A stretch of 64,000 bases of DNA, taken from positions 1 through 64,000 of the forward strand of contig NIVC01002252.1 in NCBI GenBank assembly GCA_002269645.1, given 5' to 3'. The stretch is from Macrostomum lignano. Its lineage: Eukaryota. The translations under genes and the position numbers were made by a program. Positions 1-56,800 of this stretch are shown here, piece after piece (the stretch's first letter is position 1; each line of letters begins with the position of its first letter). Below the pieces are notes generated by a model. It worked only from the letters and a program-made list of their open reading frames with translations, was not told where the DNA came from and ran no database searches.

Positions 1-572
1 GCATATTGATGTAAACAAAGCAGGCAGTCATAAAATCTTCAAGTCCAAGCTGCATCCATCGCACACTGCGTAAAACTTTTAAGTAAAAATCGACATTAGC
101 GAAAGCTTTCTTTAGCTAAATATTAGATTTTCAAGAAGGATTTTTACAAATTGCTGCAGTTGTTGGTGCTATGCAACACGAGATTCACCGCCAGCAACCC
201 AGACTGCTCCTCCACGAGTCAAGCCGGTGAGGCAGCGAAATTTAGCACGTAAAATGCATATCAACTCCAGCTAACACAGAGATTGAAAGTAAAGCACTAT
301 CTACTCTTTTCAGTGACAGTGCAGCTGAGCAGGGCTGACGTTCTGCGCACCTGGCAACCCAGCGGCGCGCACTGCCGTTGGTGGGAGAGTCGCAGTCAGA
401 GACAAACCGATTCCCTGCTGCTGTGCGGCCCGGGCCTCGTGGCTTGTGATGCAGCTGACGCAAGCCGATGATGCTGGAGGCGGTAAGCGTGCGAGACTGG
501 GGTGAGTGACGCTGACCGACTCATTCTCATGATGCATGATGAGGCAGAGGGAGCCTTGGACCCAAAGTGTGA

Positions 573-1455
573 GACAGTGTGATGCTAGCATCTAATTAGC
601 ACTCTGAGACAGTGTGAGACCAGCTAGTATCTAATTAGCACTCTGAGACAGTGTGAGACCAGCTAGCATCTAATTAGCACTCTGAGACAGTGTGAGACCA
701 GCTAGCATCTAATTAGCACTCTGAGACAGTGTGAGACCAGCTAGCATCTAATTAGCACTCTGAGACGGTGTGAGACCAGCTAGCATCTAATCAGCACTCT
801 GAGACAGTGTGAGATCAGCTAGCATCTAATTAGCACTCTGAGACAGTGTGAGACCAGCTAGCATCTAATTAGCACTCTGAGACAGTGTGAGACCAGCTAG
901 CATCTAATTAGCATCTAATTAGCACTCTGAGACAGTGTAAGACCAGCTAGCATCTAATTAGCACTCTGAGACACTATGATACCAGCTAGCATCTAATTAG
1001 CACTCTGAGACAGTGTGAGACCAGCTAGCATCTAATTAAGCACTCTGAGACAGTGTGAGACCAGCTAGCATCTAATTAGCACTCTGAGACAGTGTGAGAC
1101 CAGCTAGCATCTAAATTAGCACTCTGAGACAGTGTAAGACAGCTAGCATCTAATTAGCACTCTGAGACAGTAGACCAGCTAGTATCTAATTAGCACTCTG
1201 AGACAGTGTGAGACCAGCTAGCATCTAATTAGCACTCTGAGACAGTGTGAGACCAGCTAGCATAATTAGCACTCTGAGACAGTGTGAGACCAGCTAGCAT
1301 CTAATTAGCACTCTGAGACAGTGTGAGACCAGCTAGCATCTAATTAGCACTCTGAGACAGTGTGAGACCAGCTAGCATCTAATTAGCACTCTGAGACAGT
1401 GTGAGACCAGCTAGCATCTAATTAGCACTCTGAGACAGTGTGAGACCAGCTAGCA
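573..1455. repeat. 39-bp minisatellite (GCACTCTGAGACAGTGTGAGACCAGCTAGCATCTAATTA), about 22 units, A1 intron 2
   Basis: Direct tandem units read from sequence, with a few 1-11 nt indel variants; the last unit merges into the exon-3 acceptor GTGTTGCAG. Confidence 0.97.
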
Positions 1456-3299
1456 GCCAAGCACTCGTGTTGCAGATGGCCAGTGGCACGCAGCAGCTCC
1501 GGTCGGCTCGCCTGTGTCAGCGGTCGGAGCCTCGAGCCTCCCGCTGGAGCTGCAGCTGGAGGATCCGTGCCGCGCCAGCTGGGAGGCCTTCGGCAGCAGC
1601 GACCGCTGGAGGCAGATTGGGGTGAACGGAGTAGATCAAGTAAGCTGCTTCATTTGAATTATCTTATCATAATAATGAAATTAATAAATCCATCCATTTC
1701 ACACTTCAGCCGTAGTTCGTTTCCTTGTGCTAAGTAGCTGAGAACTGCTGGACTTAGCTGGAGGGCCGCGTCTCATTAACAGGTTCCAAAGAGACTTTTA
1801 AATTTTATGAAGTTATCACTGAATCATAGCTTATTGTGAATTAAGTGCTTTAGAAGCAGGTGCAATTTTTCTTGTAGGTCGCTTTCTACCGCTGAGCCTC
1901 ACAGTAACTGACAACCGTTTTTGCCCTCTGAGAGACCTGTCCGCCTTGCACGATGGAGTTGAAGCCTGCTTCTCTGTTTCAAGATGTACCAGCGAATCAA
2001 TTCAATGCTTCTTTAACCTAAGCAATGGCGCAACTCTGGAGCCGAGACTGGTCTGCTCAACTCTTCTTTATAGCGTGCTATCAATACTTCTTGCACTGAC
2101 TTGATACAAAATTCGCTTTTTCAGCTACGAAGCCAAAAGCAGCAAGCTGAATTCGAGTTCACAGCCAATTTCTCGCTGCACGGAGCACTGCTCACCTGTC
2201 TTCTGCCTGATCGGCCAGGGATTCGAATCGAGCAGACCATTGGAATCGTTGGTGAGAAAGAAGTGTCTGCCTGAGTTAAAAAATGTATTTTAAGTCCGCT
2301 TTGAAGATTACAAAGCGAAACATGCACTTTTCAGTCACACCAAGTGTTGAACTGTCGTTATCAACCGTGTGGGTGATTGGTCGCAGAGCCAAGGTGTACT
2401 TTTTCTCAAGCCCAGCTTATCCTCCTCAGCAGCACAGGTGCCAAATTATCTCTGGCAGCAGCACCTGGGAACTGAATGAGCATTTTAGTAAGGTAAGTAG
2501 TATTATATTATTGTTGAAAATGCTGTACCTTGCCCAATCATGTACTTTTCCATGAAATAAACTTCCAGACTAGACAGGCTTATATCAGGAACAGCATCAA
2601 CATGTCGCTAACTGAAGTAAAGTCTGAATTTGTTGTCACAGTCACGTCAGACATGCTGAATGGCACCGTGAGATGCAGTAGCAGCTATAAAAGTACAAGT
2701 CAAGGAGAAGTCATGAAAGATATCGATATTTCAAGCATCAGCGGTAAGTGCTTGCATTAGAGAATCTCCTATACGCCCGATTGGAAGAGCCATAAAATCT
2801 CCTCATTTCAGAGCCTTGCACAACTGCCATTCATGTAGACAACATCCAGTACTCGTATCAGGTTGTACAAGTGACGTCACTGAAGTGCAGCATTTGGAAT
2901 GTTCAGCACAGCTGCTGGCTTGTCAAGCCCAAAGAAGATGTCCTGGAGCATCTAATTAAGCTTGCTGTACGGTTCTTTGATTTTGTAATAATGCTTTTTA
3001 TTCAGAAGTTACTGCAACAATATCTGATGTCTTCTATTGCAGCAAGACGGCTTCAGCAGCACTCACAGGTTGAATATTATGAAACAAGAGCAGAAAAGAG
3101 ACTGGCTAGTGAGATGCAGCGTTAATCAGTCGGGAGTGACATACCCGGATGTGGAAATTGAGTTAGCAAGCGATGCTGACAGTGAGTCAAACGATGCATT
3201 CAATCACTGTTAATTGTTCCAATGCAAGTTCAAAGGTTTTTTACCACTTAAATCTACACTACACGTTGCTACATTTGTACTCGTATTAATACGAGCGTA

Positions 3300-4551: not shown

Positions 4552-4945
4552 AAGCCGTAGCCCATTGGTCAATCATGGATGAATAAAACCTTTGGTCTAG
4601 TGCGGCGCTCTGATGTGCCAGCGGCCCAGGCTCGATTCCAAGTGCAGTCATTAATTTGGGGCTAAATTGGAATCTCGGCTTGGCTCTGCTCGTGCAATTA
4701 ACGCCCCTGATCAGGGCCAACCCCCAAGGCACAGTGAAGTGCACATGTCTAAGATAAAGTTAGGGCCGCTGTAAACTCCTGTGTGAGTGAGTGCCTGTGC
4801 GTATGACTGCGTACGTATCCGCGCGCTTGTGTGCCTGCTCAGGGGAGTCGGGGAATGGGCAGCAATGCCTCTCGCCGGTTGTGACAATGTCGCCTAAAGT
4901 GCATCATGGGTGCAAACAGCTCCTTGCCTGTAACAAAAAAATGGC
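4552..4945 (+). mobile_element. tRNA-derived SINE, family 2
   Basis: A-box-like TAGCCCATTGG and B-box-like GGCTCGATTCC in the head; about 390-bp body repeated at 41200 (+) and 31236 (-). Confidence 0.7.
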
Positions 4946-6430: not shown

Positions 6431-6760
6431 GCGGTTGTAGTTTTAGTGGTTAGGGTTTCAGACTCACGACTTGAAGGTTGGGGGTTTGATTCCCGATCGG
6501 ACTGGAACAATTTGTGTCGCTTGATTGAATTTGAATTTTGAATTTGAATTTTGCATTGCTTCATAGTTCACCCAGCTGTAAAATGGGTGCCAGCATTACT
6601 GGGGTAATTGAGGGTGTGTGGCGACCCCAGTCCTTGGACTGAACAGCCGTACGCAGCCTTCAGATGCACCGCGAAATAGCTGCGGCTGAGCTGTCGGTTG
6701 CACATCTGGCCCCATTGGGGCAGGTGTAGTCAATAGTTATTGTTATTATTTATTTATTAC
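6431..6760 (+). mobile_element. tRNA-derived CORE-type SINE, family 1
   Basis: tRNA-like head (AGTGGTTAG...CAGACTCACGACTTGAAGG...GGTTTGATTCCC), CORE-like CACCCAGCTGTAAAATGGG, TTA-rich tail; copies at 9345 and 43535. Confidence 0.7.
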
Positions 6761-7365: not shown

Positions 7366-9135
7366 ATGGATCACAATCTTGTATGCATTCTGGTGCTGTT
7401 ACTGAGCTCAAGAATTGCATGCAATGCTCTGCTCTGCACTGATGCAAGTCACGAGAAGGGTCAGCTGAGTTACTTACTGCCTTTTGAGCCTTTCATTCAT
7501 GCCTCAGAAAATTTAGCGAATCCTTTGCGATAAATGTTTTAGTGACAGTGCAGCTGAGCAGGGCTGACGTTCTGCGCACCTGGCAACCCAGCGGTGCGCA
7601 CTGCCGTTGGTGGGAGAGTCGGCAGTGCTGGAGGCGGTGAGCTTGCGAGACCGGGGTGAGTGACGCTGACCGACTCATTCTCATGATGCATGATGAGGCA
7701 GAGGGAGTTTGAGACACAAAGTGTGAGACAGTGTGAGACCAGCTAGCATCTACGAGCGTAATTAGCACTCTGAGACAGTGTGAGACCAGCTAGCAGCCAA
7801 GCACTCGTGTTGCAGATGGCCAGTGGCGCCAAACACTCGTGTTGCAGATGGCCAGTGGCTCGCAGCAGCTCCGGTCGGCTCGCCCGTGTCAGCGGTCGGA
7901 GCCTCGAGCCTCCCGCTGGAGCTGCAGCTGGAGGATCCGTGCCGCGCCAGCTGGGAGGCCTTCGGCAGCAGCGACCGCTGGAGGCACCTTGGAAGATCTT
8001 ACAACAAGGTAGCAATGTTTACCTCGAACCCGTTGTGTATCTTTGCGGGATCGAGTATTTTAATAAAAGCAAGATCGAGGGAAATTTTTGCTTCAGGGTA
8101 AGGTCCGGTACATACTGGTCAGGAGCTGGACGAATGTTCCGCTAAGTTGGAGTGCCATGAAACTGTCAGGTCTTTTATTAAATTATTAAATCATCCTACT
8201 TATAATGGATGCGTTAAATTTTGTGACAATCGAGGCGCAAGACTAGTGAGTTATCTTTTTTAGGACCTTATGCTCCACTGAACCTCACCGTGATGAACAT
8301 TATGCAATGTTGGTTTAAAAACGTGGAAGCCATGAAGGCTGGGACCTTTGCCTGCCTCTTAGTTTCGAGCTGTCTTAACGGCTCGCTTGGCTGCCTCTTG
8401 AAGTATAGCAACGGGTCAACTCATCACCTGAGACAGGTGTGCCAATCTTTTTAAATAGATTTCGAATTGTCTGGAGCTTTGCTAAATTTTCTTATAAAAC
8501 TCTCCATCATGGCAGCTGAACAACCAGACGCAGCCTGCAGTGTTCGAACTCAGAGCCACCTCGGCAATGCACGATGCGACGCTCAGCTGCTTTCTGACAG
8601 ACTGACCTGCTGAGCGCATTGAGCAGACTATTGGCATTATTCGTGAGAGCGTTTTAATGAGAATGTTTCTGTTTCAGTTGACCCTGCCAGTCTGTCAGTA
8701 TCGGTGTCACCCGTGTGGGTCAGCGGCAGCAGCGTTACTGTGAATGTCACATCAGCTCCGGTTTACCCAGCACTGCATCACAGCTGCAGCATCATTTCTG
8801 CCAGCTCTGATTGGCGTCTGGATGAAAACCGCACAGATGTGAGATGAACTCATGACTTCTCTTTCTGCAGGACATCCTGTGAGATCAACTGTGCCTGACA
8901 ATTCTTATCTTTACTGTTACTCATTGTTGACGTTCAAACAACTTCCAGGTAAAAACGGCTGTCGCAAAAAATGACAAAAATCAGGCCCTGGTGGCGGTGG
9001 CGTCTCAGTTCAGATTCCAGGTCAGCGCCGAGATGCTGAACGGCACGTTGGAATGCGAGGGCAGATTTAGAGACCAAGTGAGGGAAACCGTTGCAGTGCA
9101 AACCAATGAGCGCTTTTTCATATCAGCAATAAGTG
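7366..9135 (+). pseudogene. Family A copy A2, truncated paralogue of A6
   Basis: Signal exon 7366-7459 (MDHNLVCILVLLLSSRIACNA). Exon 2 is 113 nt (76-nt deletion), CGA>TGA at 8603, and no Ig3, TM or tail exons are found after 9135. Confidence 0.8.
7720..7795. repeat. Residual 39-bp minisatellite (about 2 degenerate units), A2 intron 2
   Basis: Same unit as at 573-1455, collapsed. Confidence 0.8.
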
Positions 9136-9344
9136 GTGAGCTTCTTCAGAAAAAAGTTTCCATACTGAATGTAGACATAATTGCGTTTTTATTTGCAATT
9201 CAGCCGTCTAATTTGGTACCCTTTGATGAACTGCCTGTCTGCAAAAAATTCAAACTCCAAATATTTTCAAACTGCTATTATCCTTCTAAAACAGAACAGT
9301 TGACAGAATTATAGGGTCAATCGTACATTCCAAATGTCCGGGTT

Positions 9345-9492
9345 TGTAGCCTGGTGTTTAGAGCGTCGGACTCACAACTTGAAGAACGGGGGTTCGATTC
9401 TCGATCGCACTGGAATAATTTCTATCCTTGAGCAATACACTCAACTCTGCATTGCTTCAGTTCACCCAGCTGTAAAATGGGTGCCAGCATTA
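9345..9492 (+). mobile_element. SINE family 1, partial copy
   Basis: GGACTCACAACTTGAAG...GGTTCGATTCTCG...CCTTGAGCAATACACTCAAC...CACCCAGCTGTAAAATGGGTGCCAGCA. Confidence 0.7.
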
Positions 9493-11730: not shown

Positions 11731-12253
11731 AAAGACAATCCTAACTAGGAAAACGCCACTGCTCCGTATGCTAGACCGAACAGATATTGGTAATCCGCAA
11801 CAGATTGGGAATATACTGGGGATAGGCAATTCATAATAACATCTTCTTTCATAAGAACTATTTAAATCTAAATTGAATTTCTCATCTTAAAGTTCCACAA
11901 TAATCAAATTTTAATAAAAATTTCACAGCTAGAAATGTCTGAGCTGAGCTAAAAAAACTGTCGCCTCTGTCTCTCCTACTAGTGGCAATGGGTAGGGGTA
12001 GAGAATTTCTATTCTACTAGTGGCAAGAAATCAGAAACGTGGAAAACTTGCCATGAAAGCACCAAAACACCAGATGGAGTGAATGCCAGTACAGTCCATT
12101 GCATGCGATCAGATATGATGGGCTTTTATGCTGCTTGCTTAGTGAACACGTCACTTAAAATATAAAAGAAGCTGAATTAAGTCTGCGATTGTAACTTTAA
12201 AACCGGATAGCCAGCAACAGACTCGTAGCAGCAAAGATTTTAATAAAAGACCA

Positions 12254-15200
12254 ATGAAAATTTCGCTTTGGCAGTTGCTGCCTCTGCTGCTGAGCATGCG
12301 AGTTGCTGCATCTTTGGACTGCTCCGCTGCGAATCGCACGGGTGAGTCAGCTGCTTTTAGGGGCAACTCAAAGTCTGGCAAGGCAAAGCTGCAAATCCTT
12401 TGCGCTAAATGTTCCAGTGACAGTGCAGCTGAGCAGGGCTGACGTTCTGCGCACCTGGCAACCCAGCGGTGCGCACTGCCGTTGGTGGGAGAGTCGTCAG
12501 TCAGAGACAAACCGTTTCCCTGCTGCTGTGCGGTCCGGGCCTCGGTGGCTTGTGATGCAGCTGAGGCAGCCGATGATGCTGGAGGCGGTGAGCGTGCGAG
12601 ACTGGGGTGAGTGACGCTGACTGACTCATTCTGATGGTTCTCATTCTCATGATGCATGATGAGGCAGAGGGAGTCTGGGACACAGTGTGAGACAGTGTGA
12701 GACCAGCTCGCATCTAATTAGCACTCTGAGACAGTGTGAGACCAGCTAGCATCTAATTAGCATCTAATTAGCACTCTGAGACAGTGTGAGACCAGCTAGC
12801 ATCTAATTAGCATCTAATTAGCACTCTGAGACAGTGTGAGACCAGCTAGCATCTAATTAGCATCTAATTAGCACTCTGAGACAGTGTGAGACCAGCTAGC
12901 ATCTAATTAGCATCTAATTAGCACTCTGAGACAGTGTGAGACCAGCTAGCATCTAATTAGCACTCTGAGACAGTGTGAGACCAGCTAGCATCTAATTAGC
13001 ACTCTGAGACAGTGTGAGACCAGCTAGCAGCCAAGCACTCGTGTTGCAGATGGCCAGTGGCACGCAGCAGCTCCGGTCGACTCGCCCGTGTCAGCGGTCG
13101 GAGTCACGAGCCTCCCGCTGGAGCTGCAGCTGGAGGATCCGTGCCGCGCCAGCTGGGAGGCCTTCGGCAGCAGCGACCGCTGGAGGCCGATCGGGCGTGG
13201 CGAAGCGGTGAGGCAGATGCAGCAAATGTTTGATTTTCTTTCCACCTCAAGCCAATCACGTTTCACTCCAGGCTTTGACAACGTTTATCCGGCTACTCAG
13301 CGAGAGTTCGCTTGCTTGGCAGGCCATAAGTATCTCAGGAAGGTTGCTCATTTCTCTTTACTAATTTCATTCAGTCTTTTATGTATCGGTGATAAATATT
13401 TCCAGGCCGCTATGCCGTAATGCGCATCAACATGAGCCTGTCCAGTCACCTGCTTTTCCATCGGCTCGGCCTCTTCGTCAGCGAAGACGCTCAACGTTCG
13501 ACTTCCTTGTTCTTCCTAGACAGCTGCAGCTTCGACAAGGCCGCCTGCTGGCTTTCCGATTCTTCTGGAAGAATTGTCAGCGCCCCGCTGGTGAGCTTCC
13601 ATGCTTTCAAGCATGCATTTGATTGTGCATTCAGTAGGCTAAGAAATTTCTCAACTGTCTTCAGGTTGGCTCATCTCCAGCTGATGCCAATGGGATTCGG
13701 ACTCACAAGTTCGTGTTTAGAACTCCCCCTAATTACCACGGCAAGCTTCTGCAGTGCGGCTTGAGCACTTCTCATGGCGCTATTCTGCTTGAGAAGCTGC
13801 TGTTGTGGGAAGGTGCTCTTCTTTTGCTTTTCTAAACTTACCGGCAGTTAGAATTGCGGATCGTAGCTCGCATTGCTACTGAAGTTTAGGGACAGACTCA
13901 GATGTACCCTTGACAGCCTAGTTATCTTAACGCCATGGTAAATATAATTATTTTTAGTTCCAGTCAAAGTTCTGCACGTCTCACCAGTCCTGGTTGCTGG
14001 GCAGCTGGCAAAGCTCAGCGTGTTCTCAGACTCCCTGCCTGAGGCTCAGCACCGCTGCTCCATCGAGAGGCCGGGGTCGCAGCGAAGAAGACACCTCACT
14101 GTTCTCAGCACTGTAACGTCCTGTCGAATTCAAATGCATTGCGTACGCATTTCCAGGAAATGAACTTTGATTATTGATTTTCAATTTCAGAGCCAGTCAA
14201 AAACAATCGACAGCACGAACAGAATACTCGTCAGAGTGCGCTCAGGGTTCAGTTTTAATGTATCGATGGCTGATAGAAATGCCGACATCGTGTGCAAAGG
14301 AACTGCTGGATCAGAAAGGAAGGACATTGTTGGGTCTCGAAGTATTTCAGAAATCAGTGGTATGCACATCCGAACTCTTTGGGGAAAACATGATAATAAA
14401 TCAAAAAATAAAAATAACTTTTTCAGTCTATGCTTCTATGCTAAATCAGTCTATGCTTCATCTTTCAGAGCCCTGCGAGACAGCCGTGGACTTGGGACCG
14501 GAGAAATTCTGGCTGGCGGGGCAGACCAAGCTGGTTCAGGTGATCTCTAAGCGCTGCAGCATCTGGAATGTGATCCACAGCTGCTGGCTGAAACTGAATG
14601 GTGACGCTGCAGTCAACACGCCGCTTCAGAAAGTGCAAGTGAGTGAAAATCACCTTGGGAAAATTCTCAATCAACAAACTTCATTCAAGTCTAGAATATT
14701 TCAGCTGTCTTCACCTCTGCACCAATTGTGATTACAGCAGGGTGAGTTCAACAGTACTCACGAGCTTCGGGTAGTCGAGGCGATGACCCGTCAGAATTGG
14801 CAGGTTTTGTGCAGCGTCAGTCAGTCTGGAGTTGAGCACACTGACTCAGAGAGCAGTCTGAGCAGTGCACCAGCTGTTTTTAGTGAGTCCTTTTAGCCGA
14901 TTCGAGTCTGATTATAAAATTTGATGTTGCGACTCAATTGAATTGAAAGAAAATCAAAAGTCGAATCTTTCTTGCCATTGAAAAAACCTCAAGGCGAAGC
15001 CAGCAAGTCAACGCTTGAACTCGCGTTAGCCTACGTCGGTAACAGTCAGTCTGAAGTGAGCGTGCATGCAGTTGATCAAAATGAAAACCAAAACGCACTA
15101 CTTCCGGTCTACAGCATCAACTGCTCAGTTGCGGGGGATGAGGCGTCGACAGAGCTGAGCAGCAGCAATAGCAGTAGCACTGAGTGGCGTGCCTTACTGA

Positions 15201-33682: not shown

Positions 33683-33777
33683 AGAACTTCGAATTCCATT
33701 TTCTGTTGGTCGGTCTACTGGTATCGGCATTGCAGTGAGTAGTGCGAATTTCATCAAGTTTGTTCTCGGAAAGATAC

Positions 33778-33812
<35 letters not shown>

Positions 33813-33837
33813 GAGACAGACAGACAGACAGACAGTC

Positions 33838-33874
<37 letters not shown>

Positions 33875-33913
33875 GGCAGACAGACAGACAGGCAGACAGA
33901 CAGACAGACAGAC

Positions 33914-33958
<45 letters not shown>

Positions 33959-33960
33959 GT

Positions 33961-33998
<38 letters not shown>

Positions 33999-37713: not shown

Positions 37714-40700
37714 ATGAAGGATTTTTACAAAATTTTGCTGTGGCTGCTGCTCTGCAACACAAAATTCACCGCCGGCAACTCAGACTGCTCCTCCACGCGC
37801 CAAGCCGGTGAGGCAAGCGAAATTGAAATGCATATCAACTCCAGCTAACAGGAAGACTGAAAGTAAGCAGTATCTACTACATTTTCCAGTGACAGTGCAG
37901 CTGAGCAGGGCTGACGTTCTGCGCACCTGGCAACCCAGCGGTGCGCACTGCCGTTGGTGGGAGAGTCGGCAGTCAGAGACAAACCGATTCTCTGCTGCTG
38001 TGCGGTCCGGGCCTCGGTGGCTTGTGATGCAGCTGAGGCAGCCGATGATGCTGGAGTCAGTTAGCGTGCGAGACTGGGGTGAGTGACGCTGACCGACTCA
38101 TTCTCATGATGCAGGATGAGGCAGAGGGAGTCTGGGACACAGAGTGTGAGACAGTGTGAGACCAGCTAGCATCTAATTAGCACTCTGAGACAGTGTGAGA
38201 CCAGCTAGCGTCTAATTAGCACTGTGAGACAGTGTGAGACCAGCTAGCATCTAATTAGCACTGTGAGACAGTGTGAGACCAGCTAGCATCTAATTAGCAC
38301 TCTGAGAAAGTGTGAGACCAGCTAGCATCTAATTAGCACTCTGAGACAGTGTGAGACCAGCTAGCAGCCAATTAGCACTCTGAGACAGTGTGAGACCAGC
38401 TAGCATCTAATTAGCACTCTGAGACAGTGTGAGACCAGCTAGCAGCCAAGCACTTGTGTTGCAGATGGCCAGTGGCTCGCAGCAGCTCCGGTCGGCTCGC
38501 CCGTGTCAGCGGTCGGAGCCTCGAGCCTCCCGCTGGAGCTGCAGCTGGAGGATCCGTGCCGCGCCAGCTGGGAGGCGTTCGGCCGCAGCGACCGCTGGAG
38601 GCAGATTGGGGTGAAACGAGTAGATCAAGTAAGCTGCTTCATTTGAATTATCTTATCATAATAATGAAATTGATAAATCCATCCATTTCACACTTCAGCC
38701 CCTAGTTCGTTTCCTTGTGCTAAGTAGCTTGAGTACTACTGGACTGAGCTGGAGGGCCGTCTCATTAACAGGTCTCAGAGAGATTTTGAAATTTTATGAA
38801 GTTATCACTGAATCATAGCTTATTGTGAATTAAGTGCTTTAGAAGCAGGTTACAATTTTTCTTGTAGGTCGCTTTCTACCGCTGAGCCTCACAGTAACTG
38901 ACAACAGACTGTGCCCTCTGAGAGACCTGTCCGCCTTGCACGATGGAGATGAAGCCTGCTTCTCTGTTTCAAGATGTACCAGCGGATCGATTCGATGCTT
39001 TTTTAACCTTAGCAATGGCGCAACTCTGGAGCCGAGACTGGTCTGCTCAACTCTTCTTTATAGCGTGCTATCAATAATTTTTCTTGCACTGACTTGATAC
39101 AAAATTCGCTTTTTCAGCTACGAAGCCAAAAGCTGCAAGCTAAATTCGAGTTCACAGCCAATTTCTCGCTGCACGGAGCACTGCTCACCTGTCTTCTGCC
39201 TGATCGGCCAGTGATTCGAATCGAGCAGACCATTGGAATCGTTGGTGAGAAAGAAGTGTCTGCCTGAGTTAAAAAATGTATTTTAAGTCCGCTTTGAAGA
39301 TTACAAAGCGAAACATGCACTTTTCAGTCACACCAAGTGTTGAACTGTCGTTATCAACCGTGTGGGTGATTGGTCGCAGAGCCAAGGTGTACTTTTTCTC
39401 AAGCCCAGCTTATCCTCCTCAGCAGCACAGGTGCCAAATTATCTCTGGCAGCAGCACCTGGGAACTGAATGAGCATTTTAGTAAGGTAAGTAGTATTATA
39501 TTATTGTTGAAAATGCTGTACCTTGCCCAATCATGTACTTTTCCATGAAATAAACTTCCAGACTAGACAGGCTTACATCAGGAACAGCATCAACATGTCG
39601 CTAACTGAAGTGAAGTCTGAATTTGTAGTCACAGTCACGTCAGCCATGCTGAGGGGCACCGTGAGATGCAGTAGCAGCTATAAAAGTACGAGTCAAGGAG
39701 AAGTCAAGAAAGATATCGATATTTCAAGCATCAGCGGTAAGTGCTTGCATTAGAGAATCTCCTATACGCCCGATTGGAAGAGCCATAAAGATCTCCTCAT
39801 TTCAGAGCCTTGCACAACTGCCATTCATGTAGACAACATCCAGTACTCGTATCAGGTTGTACAAGTGACGTCACTGAGATGCAGCATTTGGAATGTTCAG
39901 CACATCTGCTGGCTTGTCAAGCCCAAAGAAGATATCAAACAGCGTCTAATTAAGCTATCTGTACGATTTTTGCTATTGTAATAATTCCTATTATTCAGAA
40001 GTTACTGCAACAATATTTGATGTCTTCTATTGCAGCAAGACGGCTTTAGCAGCACTCACAGGTTGAATATTATGAAACAAGAGCAGAAAACAGACTGGCT
40101 AGTGAGATGCAGCGTTAATCAGTCGGGAGTGACGTACCCGGATGTGGAAACTGAGTTAGCAAGCGATGATGACAGTGAGTCAAGATTTAAAGGTTTTTAC
40201 CACTTTAATCTACACTGCACGTTGCTTCGTTTATATTATTAACGAACTTATACAGCTTGTATTCGTTAGTATTCTGTTTATTGTCATTTGTGAGACTTTT
40301 GGTAGCACTTGGGTAGCGAGTAGGCCATCTAAACTGGCCAGTCCACTGACATCTTAAACAACTATCCTTAATCGTAAAATTGTCAGGAATTGCAACTTAC
40401 ACTAGCTCATTACATTTGGGGTTGTGTAACTGTTGCGAGCCTAAGGGTTCGATGTGTAACTACTCTGCTACTTATCAACCCCACTGTCTTCAGCTTTCTA
40501 CTATCAGTGGGGATTGAGTTGCATAATTTTGCTGATTTTATCTGCCCTCGGCCTCATCGTGAGCTGCATGATTATTCGAAGAATTCGCCGCGCTAGATCA
40601 ACAAAGCCAAACTCGACTTCAAGTAGAAGTTCGACATTTGGACGACGACGCGCCCTCCTCTCGAGTTCGGCCACCTCGCCGCAGGCACAGGTAGGGCTAG

Positions 40701-42036
40701 CCACAGATTTAGTTTGTACATTAGGGCACGCATGTAAGTGTCGAATACTGGTGTTTTGATGAAGAATAGCTTTAAACTTAAAAGAAAATTCTAGCTACCA
40801 TGGGTTGTTTTGGCTATTCGCTCAAGCACTTTTGCTTCTGGCTTTTGCCTGAAACTGAAGCTCTTTCTTAGATTAGCGTGGACACAGATTGCCTGGTAAA
40901 TGGCGCTGCTTATCTGATCAGATTTATGTGTGCACAAATGCAAACTACTAATTAGAACTTCCCTCAGCCTGAACCGCAATATTGCCCAAGTCCATATGAC
41001 TGTAAAATCCAGCAGTGAATTCCGGTGCATCTAATATCTGCTTTGTTACAGCTATATTTATTTTTGTTTCTTTAAAGGTTCAATTCCCATTCTAAATAGT
41101 AATATAGTAGAGATACTCGTATTCTGTTGAGTTTGTGAAATGAATTGCGATTGCTTTAACTCAAGCGTGCTATGGCCTGTACGAGCACGGGTATTGTATG
41201 AAGCCGTAGCCCATTGGTCAATCATGGATGAATAAAACCATGGGTCTAGTGCGGCGCTCTGATGTGTCAGCGGCCCAGGCTCGATTCCAAGTGCAGTCAC
41301 AATAATTCGGAGCTAAATTGGAATCTCGGCTTGGCTCTGCTCGTGCAAGTAACGCCCCTGATCAGGGCCAACCCCCAAAACACAGTGAAGTGTACATGCC
41401 TAACGATAGATAAAGTTAGGGCTGCTGTACACTCCTGTGTGAGTGAGTGCCTGTGCGTTTGACTGCGTACGTATCTGAGCGCTTGTGTGCATGCAGCTCA
41501 GGGGAGTCGGCGGAATGGGCAGTAATGCCTCTCGCCGGTTGTGTGACAATGTCGTCTAAAGTGCACCATGGGTGCAAACAGCTCCTTGCCTGTAACAAAA
41601 AAATGGCCCTTATATTCCGTAGCCCAGAATCATGAGCAGGCTGAACTGCTAGATAGACAAGGAAAAAGCTGGCGTGATCAAAGTAATCTGTTAAATTTCT
41701 CGCCTCTAAGGCCTACTAAAGTATCATGTTAAAATTCTTCGAAAGAAATGACTCTGAATAACATAAATCAATCGTTTCCACCCCCAGCGAGCGGCACCAC
41801 AGCTCAATCATCATCAGGTTGATTCCTCGCAGTCAGTGAGCAGAGGCGGTCCACCACCTGCAGAAAGCAGCTGCCGCGGCAATGAAAGCCAGCCAACCAG
41901 CAGTCAGGAGATCGACCCAGTGTACGAAGAAGTATCTTTGTGTGTCTACAGGCCGGTGCACCCTCTGCCGCGGTACCCACGGCAGTTCTCAGAAAAAAAT
42001 TGTCGACACGCCTACTATTCCAGTCGGTTTGATTGA
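37714..42036 (+). CDS. Family A receptor A5: signal peptide, discoidin-like domain, 3 Ig-like domains, TM, Tyr tail (about 620 aa)
   Basis: 12 GT-AG, phase-consistent, stop-free exons: 37714-37807, 37890-38078, 38465-38628, 38699-38771, 38868-39040, 39118-39244, 39328-39485, 39562-39736, 39806-39960, 40036-40174, 40494-40690, 41818-42036. TM followed by RRIRR; tail PVYEEV. Confidence 0.82.
38145..38445. repeat. 39-bp minisatellite, about 7-8 units, A5 intron 2
   Basis: Same unit as in A1. Confidence 0.95.
41200..41607 (+). mobile_element. SINE family 2 copy, last intron of A5
   Basis: Same position as the copy in A1, so it predates the block duplication. Confidence 0.7.
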
Positions 42037-43534: not shown

Positions 43535-43735
43535 GGGGTGTAGCCTAGTGATTAGAGTTTCAGACTCACGACTGCAAGGTCGGGGGTTCGATTCCCGATT
43601 ATACTAGAACAACTGGTGTTCTTGAACATGACACTTAACTCTATATTGTTTCAGTTCACCCAGCTGTAAAATGGATGCCAGCATTAGCTGGGTGATTGAG
43701 GGTGTGTGTGGCGACCCCCCAGTCCTTGGACTGAT
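43535..43735 (+). mobile_element. SINE family 1 copy
   Basis: CAGACTCACGACTGCAAGGTCGGGGGTTCGATTCCCG and CACCCAGCTGTAAAATGG; position homologous to the 6431 copy. Confidence 0.7.
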
Positions 43736-44667
43736 CTTTATGTACGTAAATGGGTCTAGAAACAACTTCTTGTTCGTATAAATTATTATTTGCTATTAGT
43801 ACTTTTGATTTAAGATAAAGAGCTACATTTTAATAGTCCTAAAAGAACTTCCAAGATCGTATTATCAAAATTAAATACAAAGCTTCTCTGACGCACCTGC
43901 AATTGGCTCCAATACTCTCTGAAAGCGCAACAGCGATTCTAATCAAATTTAAGACCAAAACCGAAATGTGACATGTCTCGTCAAAGCGTACACCCAGAGA
44001 TTCAGTTCGTCTCTAATGCCTCGATGCTGCTTCCGAATGAACGGTTGCTTAACGGACTGTGCCAATCTGTGTCACAAACAGGAGAATCTGTGAAGACAAG
44101 AAACACTGAACTTCGCTAGCTGCAGGTAAATTTAAGGCTTAAAAAGATTCTACAATTACAAAATTATTAACAGCTGAAAAATATAATCCAACAAGCCAGT
44201 TTGCTCAACAAGAAACGAAAACGAATACCCGATGGAGCACGATCTTGGATTCATTCTGCTGCTGTTGCTGCTGAGCTCAAAACTTGCATGCAACGCTCAG
44301 GTCTGCACTGATGCAACTCACCGGGGTCGGTCGAGTTACTCACTGCCTTTTGATACTTTTTTTCATGCCTCATACGAGTGAAATTGAGCGAATCTTTTGC
44401 GATAAATATTTCAGTCACAGTGCTGCTGAGCAGGGCTGACGTTCTGCGCACCTGGCAACCCAGCGGTGCGCACTGCCGTTGGTGGGAGAGTCGGCAGTCA
44501 GAGACAAACCGATTCCCTGCTGCTGTGCGGTCCGGGCCTCGGTGGCTTGTGATGCAGCTGAGGCAGCCGATGATGCTGGAGGCGGTGAGCGTACGAGACT
44601 GGGGTGAGTGACGCTGACCGACTCATTCTCATGATGCATGATGAGGCAGAGGGAGTCTGGGACACAA

Positions 44668-45850
44668 AGTGTGGGACAGTGTGAGACCAGCTAGCATCTA
44701 ATTAGCACTCTGAGACAGTGTGAGACCAGCTAGCATCTAATTAGCACTCTGAGACAGTGTGAGACCAGCTAGCATCTAATTAGCACTCTGAGACAGTGTG
44801 AGACCAGCTAGCATCTAATTAGCATCTAATTAGCACTCTGAGACAGTGTGAGACCAGCTAGCATCTAATTAGCACTCTGAGACAGTGTGAGACCAGCTAG
44901 CATCTAATAGCACTCTGAGACAGTGTGAGACCAGCTAGCATCTAATTAGCACTCTGAGACAGTGTGAGACCAGCTAGCATCTAATTAGCATCTAATTAGC
45001 ACTCTGAGACAGTGCGTGAGACCAGCTAGCATCTAATTAGCACTCTGAGACAGTGTGAGACCAGCTAGCATCTAATTAGCACTCTGAGACAGTGTGAGAC
45101 CAGCTAGCTGCCAATTAGCACTCTGAGACAGTGTGAGACCAGCTAGCATCTAATTAGCACTCTGAGACAGTGTGAGACCAGCTAGCATCTAATTAGCACT
45201 CTGAGACAGTGTGAGACCAGCTAGCATCTAATTAGCACTCTGAGACAGTGTGAGACCAGCTAGCATCTAATTGGCACTCTGAGACAGTGTGAGACCAGCT
45301 AGCATCTAATTAGCACTCTGAGACAGTGTGAGACCAGCTAGCATCTAATTAGCACTCTGAGACAGTGTGAGACCAGCTAGCATCTAATTAGCACTCTGAG
45401 ACAGTGTGAGACCAGCTAGCATCTAATTAGCACTCTGAGACAGTGTGAGACCAGCTAGCATCTAATTAGCACTCTGAGACAGTGTGAGACCAGCTAGCAT
45501 CTAATTAGCACTCTGAGACAGTGTGAGACCAGCTAGCATCTAATTAGCACTCTGAGACAGTGTGAGACCAGCTAGCATCTAATCAGCACTCTGAGACAGT
45601 GTGAGACCAGCTAGCATCTAATTAGCACTCTGAGACAGTGTGAGACAAGCTAGCATCTAATTAGCACTCTGAGACAGTGTGAGACCAGCTAGCATCTAAT
45701 TAGCACTCTGAGACAGTGTGAGACCAGCTAGCATCTAATGAACACTCTGAGACAGTGAGAGACCAGCTAGCATCTAATTAGCACTCTGAGACAGTATGAG
45801 ACCAGCTAGCATCTAATTAGCACTCTGAGACAGTGTGAGACCAGCTAGCA
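44668..45850. repeat. 39-bp minisatellite, about 30 units, A6 intron 2
   Basis: Longest copy of the intron-2 array. Confidence 0.97.
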
Positions 45851-46959
45851 GCCAAACACTCGTGTTGCAGATGGCCAGTGGCTCGCAGCAGCTCCGGTCG
45901 GCTCGCCCGTGTCAGCGGTCGGAGCCTCGAGCCTCCCGCTGGAGCTGCAGCTGGAGGATCCGTGCCGCGCCAGCTGGGAGGCCTTCGGCAGCAATGACCG
46001 CTGGAGGCACCTTGGAAGAGCTTACAATAAGGTAGCAATGTTTACCTCGAACCCGTAGTGTACCTTTGCGGGATCGAGTATTTTAATAAAAGCAAGAAAG
46101 GGTATTTTTCTGCTTCAGAGCACAGTTCGGTACATACTGATCAAGACCCGGACGAATGCTCCGCTAAGTTGGAGTGCCATGAAACTGTCAGGTCTTTAAT
46201 TAAAATATTAATAGAATACCTACTTCTAATTGATGGGTTAAATTTTGTGATAATTGAGTCGCAAGACGTCACTTTATTTTTAGGACCTGCCGGTCCACTG
46301 AACCTCACCGTGATGAACAGCACGCAATGTCCGTTTAAAAATCTGCAAGCCATGAAAGCTGGGAGCTTGGCCTGCCTCTTAGTTTCGAGCTGCAGTCTTG
46401 ACGGCTCACTTGGCTGCCTTTTGAACTACAGCAACGGGTCAACTCAGCACCTGAGACAGGTGCGCCAATCGTTTTAAGTAGAACTTGAATTGTGTACACT
46501 TGCTAAATTACCTCAAAAACTCTCCATCACGGCAGCTGAACAGCCAGGCACAGCCCGCAGTGTTCAAACTCAATGCCACCTCGGCAATGCACGATGCGAC
46601 GCTCAGCTGCTTTCTGACAGACCGACCTGCTGAGCGCATTGAGCAGACTATTGGGGTTTTATGTGAGAGCGTTTTAATCAGGGATGGGTTTCTGTTGAGG
46701 AAGTTATGTTGCAATTACTTCAACATGTTTATGTTTCAGTTCCCCCTGCCAGCCTGTCAGTATCGGTGTCACCCGTGTGGGTCAGCGGCAGCAGCGTCAC
46801 TGTGAATGTCACATCAGCTCCGGCTTACCCAGCACTGCATCACAGCTGCAGCATCATTTCTGCCAGCTCTGAGTGGCGTCTGGATGAAAACCGCACGAAT
46901 GTGAGATGAACTCATGACTTTCTGCAGATCATCCCTATGAGATCAGCTGTGACTTACAG

Positions 46960-51686: not shown

Positions 51687-51687
<1 letters not shown>

Positions 51688-53889: not shown

Positions 53890-56800
53890 ATGAAAAATTC
53901 ACTTTGGCATCTGCTGCCTCTGCTGCTGAGCATGCGAGTTGCTGAATCATTGAACTGCTCCGCTGTGAATCGCACGGGTGAGTCAGTGGCTCTTTAGGAG
54001 CAGCTCAAGCCTACATGTAGCAAAGCAATAAGGCTGCAAATATTTAGCGATACATTTCCAGTGACAGTGCAGCTGAGCAGGGCTGACGTTCTGCGCACCT
54101 GGCAACCCAGCGGTGCGCACTGCCGTTGGTGGGAGAGTCGGCAGTCAGAGACAAACCGATTCCCTGCTGCTGTGCGGTCCGGGCCTCGGTGGCTTGTGAT
54201 GCAGCTGAGGCAGCCGATGATGCTGGAGGCGGTGAGCGTGCGAGACTGGGGTGAGTGATGTTGACCGACTCATTCTCATGATGCATGATGAGGCAGAGGG
54301 AGTCTGGGATACAGTGTGTGAGACAGTGTGAGACCAGCTAGCATCTAATTAGCACTCTGAGACAGTGTGAGACCAGCTAGCATCTAATTAGCACTCTGAG
54401 ACAGTGTGAGACCAGCTAGCATCTAATTAGCACTCTGACACAGTGTGAGACCAGCTAGCATCTAATTAGCACTCTGAGACAGTGTGAGACCAGCTAGCAT
54501 CTAATTAGCACTCTGAGACAGTGTGAGACCAGCTAGCAGCCAAGCACTCGTGTTGCAGATGGCCAGTGGCTCGCAGCAGCTCCGGTCGGCTCGCCCGTGT
54601 CAGCGGTCGGAGCCTCGAGCCTCCCGCTGGAGCTGCAGCTGGAGGATCCGTGCCGCGCCAGCTGGGAGGCCTTCGGCAGCAGCGACCGCTGGAGGCAGGT
54701 CGGACATGGCGAAGCGGTAATGCGGGTGCAGCAAATGTTTGATTTTATTGCCGCCTCAAGCAGATCATGTTGCACTTCAGGTTTTGACAACGTTTATCCG
54801 GCTACTCAGCGAGAGTTCGCTTGCTTGGCAGGCCATAAATATCTCAGGAAAGTTTGCTAATTTCACTTTGCTGATCTCATTTAGTCTGTTTTCTATTGAC
54901 AATAAATATTTCCAGGCCGCCATGCATTGATGTGCATCAACATGAACCTGTTCAGTAACCTTCTCTTCCATCGGCTCGGCCTCTTCGTCAGCGAAGACGC
55001 TCAACATTCGATTTCTTGGATCAACCTCTTTGTAGATAGCTGCAGCTTCGGCAATGCCGCCTGCTGGCTTTCCGATTCTTCTGGAAGAATTGTCAGCGCA
55101 ACGCTGGTGAGCGGGCCATCAAGGACCTTGGTTTTCAAGCATGCATTCGATTGTGCATTCAGTAGGCTGAGGAAGTACTCAACTGGCTTTAGGTTGGCTC
55201 GTCTCGAGCTGATGAAAGTGGGATTCGGACTCACAAGCTCGAGTTTGGAGCTCTTCCTGATGACCACGGAAAGCTGCTGCAGTGCGGCTTGAGCACTTCT
55301 CAAGGCGCTGTTCTGCTCAAGAAGCTGCTGTTGTGGGAAGGTGCTCTTCTTTTGCTTTTCTTTGTTTTCGCAGCGGTGATTGAACTGCAGATCATATTGC
55401 AACTGGAGTTTAGTTTAGGGATGGATGGAGACGCTGATGGATCGCAGACTCAGGTGTACCCTCGACAGTCTCAGATTAAGTTTTAAGCTTTTTATTTAAC
55501 GCCATGTTAAAAATATTTATTTTTAGTTTCAGTCAAAGCTCTGCACATCTCAGCTTTGCCAGTCCTGGTTGCTGGGCAGCTGGCAAAGCTCAGCGTGTTC
55601 TCAGATTCTTTGCCTGAGGCTCAGCACCGCTGCTTCATCGGGAGGCCGGGGTCGCAGCGAAGTCGAAACCTCACTGCTCTGAGCACTGTAATTTCCTGAT
55701 AATTGCGAATGCATTGCCTGCGCGTTCCATGAAATGAACTTTCCTTCTTGATTTTCAATTTCAGAGCGAGTCAAAAACCATCGACAGCTGGAACAGAACA
55801 CTCGTCAGAGTTCGCTCAGAGTTCGGTTTTAATGTATCCATGGCTGATCAAAATTCCATCATCATGTGCAAAGGAACTGCTGGATCAGAAAGGAAGGAGG
55901 CTACTTGGTATCAAAGCATTTCAGAAATCAGTGGTATGAATATTTAAAAGAATTTTGGGGAACTATGATAATAAATCAAAAAAGAAGAATAACTTTAAGA
56001 GGATTTTTTCTTTATTCGCTGACATCTTTGGCAACCTAGCATGCGCCGTGTAGTCCTCATTGGCCCTTAAAGTCCTCTTGACTGCCCTAACAAGCCGGAA
56101 CATAAGTATGCTTCATCAGTCTGTGCTTCATCTTTCAGAGCCCTGCGAGACAGCCGTGGACTTGGGACCGGAGAAATTCTGGCTGGTGGGGCAGATCAAG
56201 CTGGTTCAGGTGATCTCTAAGCGCTGCAGCATCTGGAATGTGAGCCACAGCTGCTGGCTGAAACTGAATGGTGATGCTGCAGTCAGCACACCGCTTCAGA
56301 AAGTGCAAGTGAGTGAAAATCACCTTTGGTAAATTCTTAATGAACAAACTTCATTCAGGTCTAGAATATGTCAGCTGTCTTCACCTTTGCACCAATTTCG
56401 GTTACAGCAGGGTGAGTTCAACAGCACTCACGAGCTTCGGGTATTCGAGGCGATGACCCGTCAGAATTGGCAGGTTTTGTGCAGCGTCAATCAGTCTGGA
56501 GTTGAGCACAGTGACTCAGAAAGCAGTCTGAGCAGTGCACCAGCTGTTTTTTGTGAGTCATTTAAAGTTTTTAACGTTTCTGTTCAATTTGAATCGAAAA
56601 AATCAAAAGCCGAATCTTTCTTGTCATTGGAAAAACCTCAAGGCAAAGCCAGCAGGTCAACGCTTGAACTCGCGTTAGCCTACGTCTTTAACAGCCATTC
56701 TGAAGTTCACGTGCGTGCAGTTTATCAAAATAAAAACCAAAACCTACTACTTCCTGTGCACAGCATCAACTGCTCAGTTGCAGATGAGGCATCGTCAAAG

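What the first reader, a model, noticed from the sequence alone, without database searches (positions are those of the whole stretch)
314..54716. Minisatellite-anchored homogenised cassette: exon 2 and most of exon 3 are near-identical in otherwise divergent paralogues
Seen: the 189-nt exon 2 differs at only about 2-5 sites among A3-A7, including silent sites. The adjoining intron (GTGAGTGACGCTGACCGACTCATTCTCATGATGCATGATGAGGCAGAGG) and exon 3 up to GACCGCTGGAGG are also near-identical. Identity drops abruptly at the exon-2 acceptor and after CGCTGGAGG; signal exons and Ig exons differ strongly even at protein level. The tract is centred on the 39-bp array, whose copy number runs about 22, 2, 8, 16, 7, 30 and 6. 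Known: simple repeats flanking sea-urchin SpTransformer genes are proposed to promote conversion and duplication. Inference: the array seeds interlocus gene conversion, giving one shared N-terminal module on variable Ig stalks and tails.
Basis: partly seen in the sequence, partly recalled or inferred. Interest (0 to 1): 0.85.

Follow-up and report, generated by a model that had tools for sequence, protein, structure and literature searches.

The report
Gene-conversion block in flatworm receptor genes
In a tandem cluster of otherwise very different flatworm (Macrostomum lignano) cell-surface receptor genes, one short block is kept almost identical in every copy by repeated copying between genes; this process is well known, and the claim that the repeat array inside the block triggers it is not shown.

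Summary
Seven + strand paralogues share a block of exon 2 (189 nt), intron 2 with a 39-bp array, and the first 138 nt of exon 3. The block is 95-100% identical between genes whose flanks cannot be aligned. Silent-site divergence (dS) is 0-0.10 in the block and 1.1 to saturated in the later exons. Nine more copies on two other M. lignano contigs show the same pattern.

The cause is interlocus gene conversion, not selection alone. The first 49 intron bases are as uniform as the exon. Block and flank relationships disagree. Mosaic genes exist (A4, B6; MaxChi P<=0.0005). The block is a GC island (63-74% against 42-55%).

The genes encode receptors with an unclassified N-terminal domain, three Ig-like domains, a membrane anchor and tails with tyrosine motifs. 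The family was found only in M. lignano.

The "array seeds conversion" idea is unproven. For it: the array is central, one mosaic junction lies at its edge, and the one unhomogenised relative lacks an array. Against it: diversity is highest beside the array, array length has no effect, and 2-4-unit copies stay uniform. A4's exon 3 is not homogenised, and A2 is damaged (A1 possibly). This is a new member of a known kind, comparable to CEACAM and Siglec paired receptors.

The parts
314..501 (+). A1 exon 2. It is 188 nt, with three 1-nt indels in homopolymer contexts, so it is either a possible pseudogene or carries read errors.
570..1455 (+). A1 intron-2 array: 22 units of 39 bp, one of them the 50-bp variant.
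1476..1613 (+). A1 exon-3 core (homogenised part). Exon 3 runs on to 1639.
7543..7655 (+). A2 exon 2, with a 76-nt deletion that shifts the frame.
7724..7859 (+). A2 array remnant (2 units), followed by a 32-nt tandem duplication of the exon-3 acceptor.
7848..7985 (+). A2 exon-3 core, 100% identical to that of A7.
12254..12677 (+). A3 exon 1, intron 1, exon 2 (12418-12606) and the 5' intron flank. This is the partner of the A4 tract.
12678..13029 (+). A3 array: 8 units, four of them the 50-bp variant.
13050..13187 (+). A3 exon-3 core.
20296..20716 (+). A4 exon 1, intron 1, exon 2 (20460-20648) and the 5' flank. It is 89-94% identical to A3 from the ATG onward and unrelated upstream, which marks a converted tract ending at the array edge.
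20717..21371 (+). A4 array of its own 41-42-bp unit (16 units). It is not exchanged with the other arrays.
21381..21506 (+). A4 exon-3 first part. It is divergent (73-74%) with a 12-nt in-frame deletion, so it is not homogenised.
37714..42036 (+). A5 complete intact gene of 12 exons. It includes exon 2 (37890-38078), the array (38147-38444) and the exon-3 core (38465-38602).
44415..44603 (+). A6 exon 2.
44672..45850 (+). A6 array: 30 units, two of them the 50-bp variant.
45871..46008 (+). A6 exon-3 core.
54062..54250 (+). A7 exon 2.
54319..54538 (+). A7 array of 6 units.
54559..54696 (+). A7 exon-3 core.

Best explanation
The window is a tandem cluster of Macrostomum lignano genes for type-I membrane receptors. 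Each protein has a signal peptide, an unclassified beta-rich N-terminal domain of about 145 residues, three Ig-like domains, a transmembrane segment and a cytoplasmic tail with tyrosine motifs.

One sub-genic block evolves in concert across at least 16 copies on three contigs. It consists of exon 2, intron 2 with its 39-bp minisatellite, and the first 138 nt of exon 3. Repeated non-reciprocal copying between paralogues keeps overwriting it (interlocus gene conversion, possibly with some unequal exchange). The rest of each gene is anciently diverged.

The sharp edges are probably self-reinforcing (inferred). Heteroduplex DNA cannot extend into flanks that no longer align, and purifying selection (dN/dS about 0.3 in exon 2) removes damaging imports. 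Long-term conversion has left a GC island.

The array is part of the exchanged block, varies in length, and sometimes marks a tract end. Its role as initiator is an open sub-hypothesis, not a result.

Shown: the identity pattern, the dS contrast, the disagreement between block and flanks, the mosaics and the GC island. Inferred: the molecular mechanism, the reason for the sharp edges, and receptor function.
For: Organism and family:
- M. lignano only.

Identity and divergence:
- Block 95-100% against unalignable flanks.
- Block dS is 0-0.10 between non-sisters. Sister-pair dS in other exons is 0.059-0.142, and non-sister dS is 1.09 to saturated, with 43-52% amino-acid identity.
- Intron 2's first 49 nt has pi 0.015-0.034, as low as exon 2 (0.020-0.052). 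Intron 1 has pi 0.50.

Conversion after duplication:
- The sister signal is erased inside the block. A2 exon-3 core is 100% identical to A7 but 98.6% to its sister A6.
- Variants are shared across lineages and contigs: A1+B6 GCCTTGGACCC, A4+A6+B1, A6+B4+B5, A5+B3, A4+B2.

Mosaic genes:
- A4 is A3-like from the ATG to the array edge, and then has its own array and exon 3.
- B6 is A4-like downstream but has the consensus array and exon 3. MaxChi chi-square is 73.6, with the breakpoint at exon-3 nt ~134 and P<=0.0005.

Composition:
- Exon 2 is 63% GC and the exon-3 core 73.9%. The exon-3 tail is 42% and other exons 45-55%.
- The unhomogenised relative P0037 is 47% GC in the equivalent exon.

Other loci and proteins:
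- Nine further copies lie on NIVC01001776.1 and NIVC01003341.1.
- In predicted proteins the block is 87-100% identical where the remainder is 27-51%.

Fold:
- The stalk is Ig-like.
Against: - No conversion event was observed directly.
- All DNA comes from long-read assemblies of one species. Short-read polishing across near-identical paralogues could inflate the identity.
- The block has few polymorphic sites, so the number, timing and direction of events cannot be resolved.
- The edges fall within about 10-40 nt in six lineages. That is tighter than random tract ends predict, so selection or a cis element may also be involved.
Confidence: 0.8

Rival explanations
1. The 39-bp array is the initiator: breaks or replication slippage in the array start ectopic repair, and the tracts spread outward into exon 2 and exon 3.
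For: - The array sits roughly centrally, with about 260 nt of block on its 5' side and about 160 nt on its 3' side.
- The A4/B3 junction between homogenised and private sequence lies at the 5' edge of the array.
- The exact 39-mer unit is shared by arrays of six lineages on three contigs.
- Array length differs 1.3-4-fold between homeologues.
- The only unhomogenised family member, P0037, has the homologous intron with no array.
Against: - Diversity is highest in the 18 nt next to the array (pi 0.158) and lowest further away. This is the opposite of a hotspot gradient.
- Array length does not track homogeneity (rho +0.37, p 0.21). B2 has the longest array (34 units) and the most divergent exon 2.
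- A2 (2 units) and B3 (4 units) remain near-identical to the others.
- Large arrays in other introns do not homogenise their flanking exons. Examples are the 17-bp x166 array in A6 and the 15-bp x77 array in the P0037 gene.
- The P0037 control is a single case. It is also confounded, because that gene is too diverged everywhere for conversion to occur.
Confidence: 0.3
2. Purifying selection alone, on the protein or on an RNA or DNA element, keeps the block identical without any exchange.
For: dN is lower than dS in exon 2 (dN 0-0.029, dS 0.023-0.097), so there is some constraint.
Against: - Silent sites and 49 intron bases are as uniform as replacement sites.
- The array consensus is shared between genes.
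- The sister signal is erased, and mosaics have sharp breakpoints.
- P0037 shows that the domain tolerates 36-42% identity.
- The GC island fits biased conversion.
Confidence: 0.02
3. Assembly or polishing artefact. Reads from many paralogues were pooled, which made the copies look alike.
For: - The genome is repeat-rich and recently duplicated (PMC12869490).
- A1 and several array units carry homopolymer-type 1-nt indels typical of long-read error.
Against: - Each copy keeps private substitutions, indels and its own array length.
- A4's divergent exon 3 and array recur in its homeologue B3 on another contig.
- UniRef proteins under accession series separate from the NCBI PAA set show the same invariant peptide on different signal exons.
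- Cross-mapping of reads would itself require the copies to be near-identical already.
Confidence: 0.05
4. One-off spread. The block was copied into each gene once, recently (a burst, or exon shuffling by a mobile element), and is not being exchanged now.
For: Most variants in the block are private, giving a star-like pattern. The edges are sharp.
Against: - The distant relative P0037 has the same exon-intron-exon layout at the same position, so the block is ancestral and not an insertion.
- Tract ends differ between lineages: exon 1 for A3/A4, and about 10 nt earlier in exon 3 for B1/B2 and within it for B6.
- Several conflicting shared variants exist.
- A GC island implies long-term activity.
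- No terminal repeats or target-site duplications were seen at the edges on reading.
Confidence: 0.1

Closest known systems
Paired-receptor families: CEACAM1-related genes, Siglec-5/14 and Siglec-11/16 (PMC2832619, PMC7042247, PMC5112662, PMC5701461, PMC4042635)
   Same: Gene conversion keeps the membrane-distal, presumably ligand-binding head of IgSF receptors near-identical, while the stalks and signalling tails differ. In CEACAM the high-similarity region barely extends into the flanking introns. Pseudogenes take part in the exchange in the Siglec-11/16 case.
   Different: - Here there are 16 or more copies rather than pairs.
- The head is not a recognisable Ig V domain.
- The block ends inside an exon and covers only about three quarters of the domain.
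- It includes a whole intron with a minisatellite.
- No opposing ITIM/ITAM logic has been shown.
Human fetal G-gamma/A-gamma globin conversion bounded by a simple (TG)n stretch in IVS2 (Slightom, Blechl and Smithies 1980; from my own knowledge, not checked here)
   Same: An intronic simple repeat lies at the edge of a converted tract between tandem paralogues and was proposed as a recombination hotspot.
   Different: That case has two genes and a dinucleotide repeat at the tract boundary. This one has many genes and a 39-bp array inside the tract.
SpTransformer (Sp185/333) clusters of the sea urchin (PMC3091723)
   Same: A tandem, diverse gene family in which simple repeats were proposed to promote duplication and/or conversion.
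   Different: The SpTrf microsatellites bound whole genes and segmental duplications and are linked to diversification. Here the array is intronic and internal, and the result is homogenisation.
Human minisatellite-associated meiotic hotspots such as MS32 (from my own knowledge)
   Same: A length-unstable tandem array of tens of base pairs is associated with conversion.
   Different: In those cases the hotspot lies in the flank and drives array instability, with polarity. No polarity or gradient was detected here.
Trypanosome VSG 70-bp repeats (from my own knowledge)
   Same: A repeat array next to a gene cassette supplies homology and a boundary for gene conversion.
   Different: There it serves programmed antigenic switching into an expression site. 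Nothing here suggests a programmed or somatic process.

Membership tests
Concerted evolution by interlocus gene conversion | Paralogues are more alike in the block than in the flanks, including at silent and intronic sites | tested here: met
   Block 95-100% against unalignable flanks; dS 0-0.10 against >1.1; intron pi 0.015-0.034.
Concerted evolution by interlocus gene conversion | Relationships inside the block conflict with those of the flanks | tested here: met
   Sister pairs are not closest inside the block, and variants are shared across lineages and contigs.
Concerted evolution by interlocus gene conversion | Mosaic genes with statistically supported breakpoints | tested here: met
   For B6 against A7 and A4, MaxChi is 73.6 with P<=0.0005. 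The A4/A3 tract runs from the ATG to the array edge.
Concerted evolution by interlocus gene conversion | Direct observation of exchange events (pedigree, sperm or population data) | not testable with these tools
   No reads or population data were available.
GC-biased gene conversion footprint | GC and GC3 are raised in the converted tract relative to neighbouring exons and to an unconverted homologue | tested here: met
   Block exons are 63-74% GC (GC3 71-76). The exon-3 tail is 42% and other exons 45-55%. P0037's equivalent exon is 47%.
Minisatellite-driven recombination hotspot | A tandem array of 10-100-bp units that varies in length between copies | tested here: met
   Between 2 and 34 units; homeologues compare as 16/4, 8/6 and 30/8.
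Minisatellite-driven recombination hotspot | A gradient or polarity of exchange centred on the array or its flank | tested here: not met
   pi is highest (0.158) right next to the array; variant units are scattered, with no clear polarity.
Minisatellite-driven recombination hotspot | Exchange depends on the presence or size of the array | tested here: inconclusive
   rho +0.37, p 0.21. Copies with 2-4 units are still homogenised. One array-less relative is unhomogenised, but that comparison is confounded.
SpTransformer-type repeat-bounded units | Simple repeats lie at the edges of the duplicated or converted segment | tested here: not met
   The edges are the exon-2 acceptor and a point inside exon 3. 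The array is internal.
Paired receptors (CEACAM/Siglec type) | The same extracellular head on receptors with opposing signalling tails | tested here: inconclusive
   The heads are identical. The tails differ and carry tyrosine motifs: YEEV in A5, SVYLVL in A4, and SSEYDYP and YENE in A7. No ITAM or charged transmembrane residue was identified.
Immunoglobulin superfamily | Ig-like beta-sandwich domains | tested here: met
   Residues 146-390 have pLDDT 72-93. Foldseek matches nectin, Necl, RAGE, SIRP-alpha and SYG ectodomains at E 1e-9 to 1e-7. Pfam Ig models give no hit.
F5/8 type C (discoidin) domain, the UniRef name of fragment P0006 | A match to the family profile or fold | tested here: not met
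   There is no Pfam hit and no PDB sequence match. AF2 gives pLDDT <50 for the N-terminal domain in two runs.

The most novel reading that the evidence does not exclude
The 39-bp array is a dedicated cis-acting recombination signal, comparable to VSG 70-bp repeats or immunoglobulin switch regions. On this reading it targets breaks to this intron so that heads (exons 1-2) and bodies (exon 3 onward) of different receptor genes are swapped, possibly in somatic cells as well, creating chimeric receptors. The homogenised block would then be the footprint of that system. The evidence does not exclude it, because A4 and B6 are natural head/body chimeras with junctions at or near the array. Nothing specifically supports it either.
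Probability: 0.06. Interest if true: 0.85.

Novelty: new member of a known kind. Interest (0 to 1): 0.45.

Why it matters
This is a clean, many-copy example of sub-genic concerted evolution in a lophotrochozoan. It involves a large receptor family that is found only in M. lignano and has not been described. The heads of the receptors are kept uniform while the stalks and signalling tails diversify, which suggests one common ligand or partner read out in many ways. At least 16 natural replicates carry arrays of 2 to 34 units, and M. lignano can be made transgenic (my own knowledge). The long-standing question of whether minisatellites start ectopic conversion could therefore be tested here. There is also a practical point: predicted proteins often begin at exon 3 or fuse neighbouring genes, so the annotation of the family needs repair.

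Tried and rejected
- Rfam scan of the window: no family.
- Pfam: no hit on the block peptide, the full A5 protein or the second gene family.
- PDB sequence search with the N-terminal domain: only a chance hit.
- AF2, two runs: the N-terminal domain stays below pLDDT 50, probably because the paralogue alignment has almost no variation there. Its fold is unknown, and the UniRef names (F5/8 type C, DUF2531, Bgal_small_N, ASH, RHD, ZP) are not credible.
- Contig look-ups for UniRef-only fragments P0001 and P0007 failed. NCBI proteins P0012, P0037 and P0032 worked.
- A literature search for M. lignano with immunoglobulin or gene conversion found nothing on this family.
- I first read exon 2 as closed in all frames. 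That was A1's indels. A3-A7 are open in the frame that joins exon 1 and exon 3.
- I considered the array as coding sequence, because 39 is 13 codons. By my reading of the 39-bp consensus unit, stop codons occur in all six frames.
- I considered a mobile exon-carrying element. P0037 keeps the same intron position, which rules it out.
- Exact splice sites of A6 exons 9-10, and of several A3, A4 and A7 exons, were not resolved. In-frame homology blocks were used for dS instead.
Full report
**What the window is**

The 64-kb window is eukaryotic, 45.9% GC, and has no Rfam match. The peptide encoded by exons 2-3 is up to 100% identical to predicted protein fragments of the flatworm Macrostomum lignano. 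A search of 1.84 billion representative proteins found 26 relatives. Every one whose source was looked up is from M. lignano. [quoted passage not shown]

**Checking the observation**

- TRF and my own parsing give 22, 2, 8, 16, 8, 30 and 6 units.
- The 49-nt intron start occurs six times with at most 2 mismatches, and none is expected by chance. A3 carries a 15-nt insertion.
- GACCGCTGGAGG occurs six times on the + strand.

Global pairwise identities:

| Segment | Non-sister pairs | Sister pairs |
|---|---|---|
| Last 150 nt of intron 1 | 53-60% (unrelated level; A4 excepted, see the mosaics section) | 78-81% |
| 150 nt after the exon-3 core | 44-54% (unrelated level) | 87-93% |
| Exon 2, both intron-2 flanks, 138-nt exon-3 core | 95-100% for nearly all pairs | same |

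- Exon 2 differs at 2-9 sites among A3-A7.
- A4's exon 3 is not homogenised (73-74% identity, 12-nt in-frame deletion).
- A3 and A4 carry 50-bp and 41-42-bp unit variants.
- A2 has a 76-nt deletion in exon 2 and a 32-nt duplication of the exon-3 acceptor.
- A1 has 1-nt indels in exons 2 and 4 and no ATG. Its indels sit in homopolymer contexts and could be long-read errors.
- The self-comparison shows a segmental duplication giving sister pairs A1~A5, A2~A6 and A3~A7.

**Gene model**

In A3-A7, exon 2 (189 nt) is open in the frame that takes one base from exon 1 and passes one base to exon 3. UniRef fragments confirm the exon 1-exon 2 junction.

I assembled an intact 12-exon A5 gene with canonical splice sites:
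- a signal exon;
- exons 2-4, encoding an N-terminal domain of about 145 residues;
- three domains, each split over two exons;
- a transmembrane exon;
- a tail exon carrying DPVYEEV.

Other tails carry SSEYDYP, YENE or SVYLVL.

Pfam finds nothing in the protein. AF2 predicts residues 146-390 with pLDDT 72-93 as three beta-sandwich domains. Foldseek matches them to nectin, Necl, RAGE, SIRP-alpha and SYG/Rst ectodomains at E 1e-9 to 1e-7.

The N-terminal domain stayed below pLDDT 50 in two runs and has no PDB sequence relative, so its fold is unknown. The block encodes only about 109 of its about 145 residues. The last 9-10 codons of exon 3 and all of exon 4 are gene-specific.

**Is it selection or exchange?**

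Nei-Gojobori estimates:

| Comparison | dS |
|---|---|
| Block, non-sister pairs | 0-0.10 |
| Other exons, sister pairs | 0.059, 0.142, 0.135 |
| Other exons, non-sister pairs | 1.09 to saturated (43-52% amino-acid identity) |

That is clearly not the case.

Nucleotide diversity across 13 copies:

| Region | pi |
|---|---|
| Intron 1 | 0.50 |
| Exon 2 | 0.020-0.052 |
| First 49 nt of intron 2 | 0.015-0.034 |

Non-coding sequence is therefore as uniform as coding sequence. Inside the block, sister genes are no closer than non-sisters. A2 is 100% identical to A7 in the exon-3 core but 98.6% to its sister A6. Exchange therefore continued after the segmental duplication.

**More copies elsewhere**

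The NCBI assembly GCA_002269645.1 holds further loci.
- L001 (NIVC01001776.1) has six cassettes, B1-B6. Part of it is colinear with window 19.5-47 kb at 88-96% identity, which pairs B3 with A4, B4 with A5 and B5 with A6.
- L003 (NIVC01003341.1) has three more cassettes.
- All copies show the same cliff at the exon-2 acceptor.
- Variants are shared across unrelated lineages and contigs: A1+B6, A4+A6+B1, A6+B4+B5, A5+B3 and A4+B2.
- In predicted proteins of ten or more subfamilies, the block is 87-100% identical while the remainder is 27-51%.

**Mosaic genes**

A4 is unrelated to A3 upstream of the ATG. It is then 91-94% identical through exon 1 and intron 1, closer than A3 is to its own sister A7. 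It is 96-100% identical through exon 2. From the 5' edge of the array onward it has its own 41-bp array and its own exon 3. Its homeologue B3 has the same private array units and exon 3, so these features are real.

B6 matches A4 at 72-100% downstream but carries the consensus array and consensus exon 3. In the triplet B6/A7/A4, 25 consecutive informative sites favour A7 and then the signal switches to A4. MaxChi is 73.6, the breakpoint is at exon-3 nt ~134, and the permutation P is <=0.0005.

The 3' edge lies about 10 nt earlier in B1 and B2.

**GC island**

- A5 exon 2 is 63% GC (GC3 71%).
- The exon-3 core is 73.9% GC and the exon-3 tail is 42%.
- Other exons are 45-55% GC (GC3 46-57%).
- The first 49 nt of intron 2 are 55% GC, against 29-40% in the other introns measured.
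- The unhomogenised relative P0037 has 47% GC in the equivalent exon.

This fits GC-biased gene conversion, an established consequence of frequent conversion.

**The array**

The unit arose from the 3' end of intron 2. The last partial unit runs into the acceptor. The exact 39-mer is shared by arrays of six lineages: 27/34 units in B2, 13/16 in B6, 17/30 in A6, and 65 exact units in L003. The 50-bp variant occurs in A3, A1 and A6. The arrays themselves are therefore exchanged.

Evidence for an initiating role:
- the central position;
- the A4/B3 junction at the array edge;
- P0037 (BOX15_Mlig026732g2). Its block equivalent is only 36-42% identical, like the rest of the protein, and its homologous 517-bp intron has no array.

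Evidence against:
- diversity is highest (0.158) in the 18 nt next to the array;
- array length does not predict homogeneity (rho +0.37, p 0.21, n 13);
- A2 and B3, with 2-4 units, are still homogenised;
- large arrays in other introns leave their flanking exons divergent.

The P0037 control is a single case and is confounded by its overall divergence. I rate the seeding idea at about 0.3.

**Artefact?**

- Each copy keeps private variants and its own array length.
- The A4/B3 pair reproduces the exception on separate contigs.
- Predicted proteins under a second accession series (UniRef A0A1I8...) show the same invariant peptide on different signal exons.
- Polishing could still have trimmed real differences. 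Only raw reads can settle this.

**Comparison with what is known**

The closest analogues are vertebrate paired receptors. In CEACAM and Siglec families, conversion keeps the ligand-binding head alike on receptors with different tails. In CEACAM the similar region barely extends into the introns (PMC2832619; PMC5701461).

SpTransformer microsatellites bound whole units and are linked to diversification (PMC3091723). That resemblance is therefore loose.

The gamma-globin (TG)n boundary and human minisatellite hotspots are older precedents for the repeat idea (my own knowledge).

**Verdict**

Gene conversion is well supported. The array's causal role is not shown, and two tests argue against it. 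This is a new member of a known kind, in an undescribed receptor family found only in M. lignano. Interest is moderate.

Noticed in passing
window 25490-30760, minus strand: A non-LTR retrotransposon with reverse transcriptase, RNase H and endonuclease domains (Pfam). It is absent from the colinear segment of L001 (window 25384->31128 against L001 42729->42839), so it is a recent insertion between A4 and the next gene.
   Followed up: partly
window 17444-18748, 34211-36970, 59105-61233, 62658-63995: A second paralogous family interleaved with the A genes. Its ORFs carry NHYC...DDFYHRD...C.W motifs and a transmembrane segment, and have no Pfam hit. One copy follows each of A3, A4 and A7. The UniRef model P0018 wrongly fuses A3, this gene and A4.
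   Followed up: partly
window 46965-49769: A 17-bp unit (CTGCTGACTGTTAATTA) repeated 166 times in the A6 intron between the two halves of the second Ig-like domain. The flanking exons are not homogenised.
   Followed up: partly
window 10115-11732: A 102-bp unit repeated 16 times, with a 302-bp higher-order period, in the region after A2.
   Followed up: no
window 22949-23139, 24345-24449, 33776-34045: More tandem repeats: a 15-bp x12.7 array inside A4, (GTCA)26 just before A4's last exon, and (ACAG)68. Intronic repeats are common in this locus.
   Followed up: no
window 18748-19284: A 178-aa ORF that reads like the N-terminal half of a mariner/Tc1-type transposase (my recollection of the family; no significant Pfam hit). 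It lies where colinearity with the A7-side copy ends.
   Followed up: no
window 4600-4944 (inverted copy 31234-31588); 6434-6642, 9342-9491, 43545-43734: Short dispersed repeats. Some have a tRNA-like stretch, so they are probably SINE-type elements.
   Followed up: no
L001 38078-38640 and 55680-55863: Homeologous copies are damaged. B3 has a mutated exon-2 donor region and a deletion removing the exon-3 acceptor. B5 has a 5-nt deletion in exon 2. Together with A2, and possibly A1, up to a quarter of the copies are likely pseudogenes that still stay in the exchange pool.
   Followed up: partly
window 502-550 and equivalents: The first 49 nt of intron 2 are as invariant as the exon (pi 0.015-0.034), while the next 18 nt are variable (0.158). 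A splicing or other cis function for this stretch cannot be excluded.
   Followed up: no
L002 11244-12411: The unhomogenised relative (P0037 gene) carries a 15-bp x77 array in a later intron. It also has exons 1 and 2 fused into one exon.
   Followed up: partly
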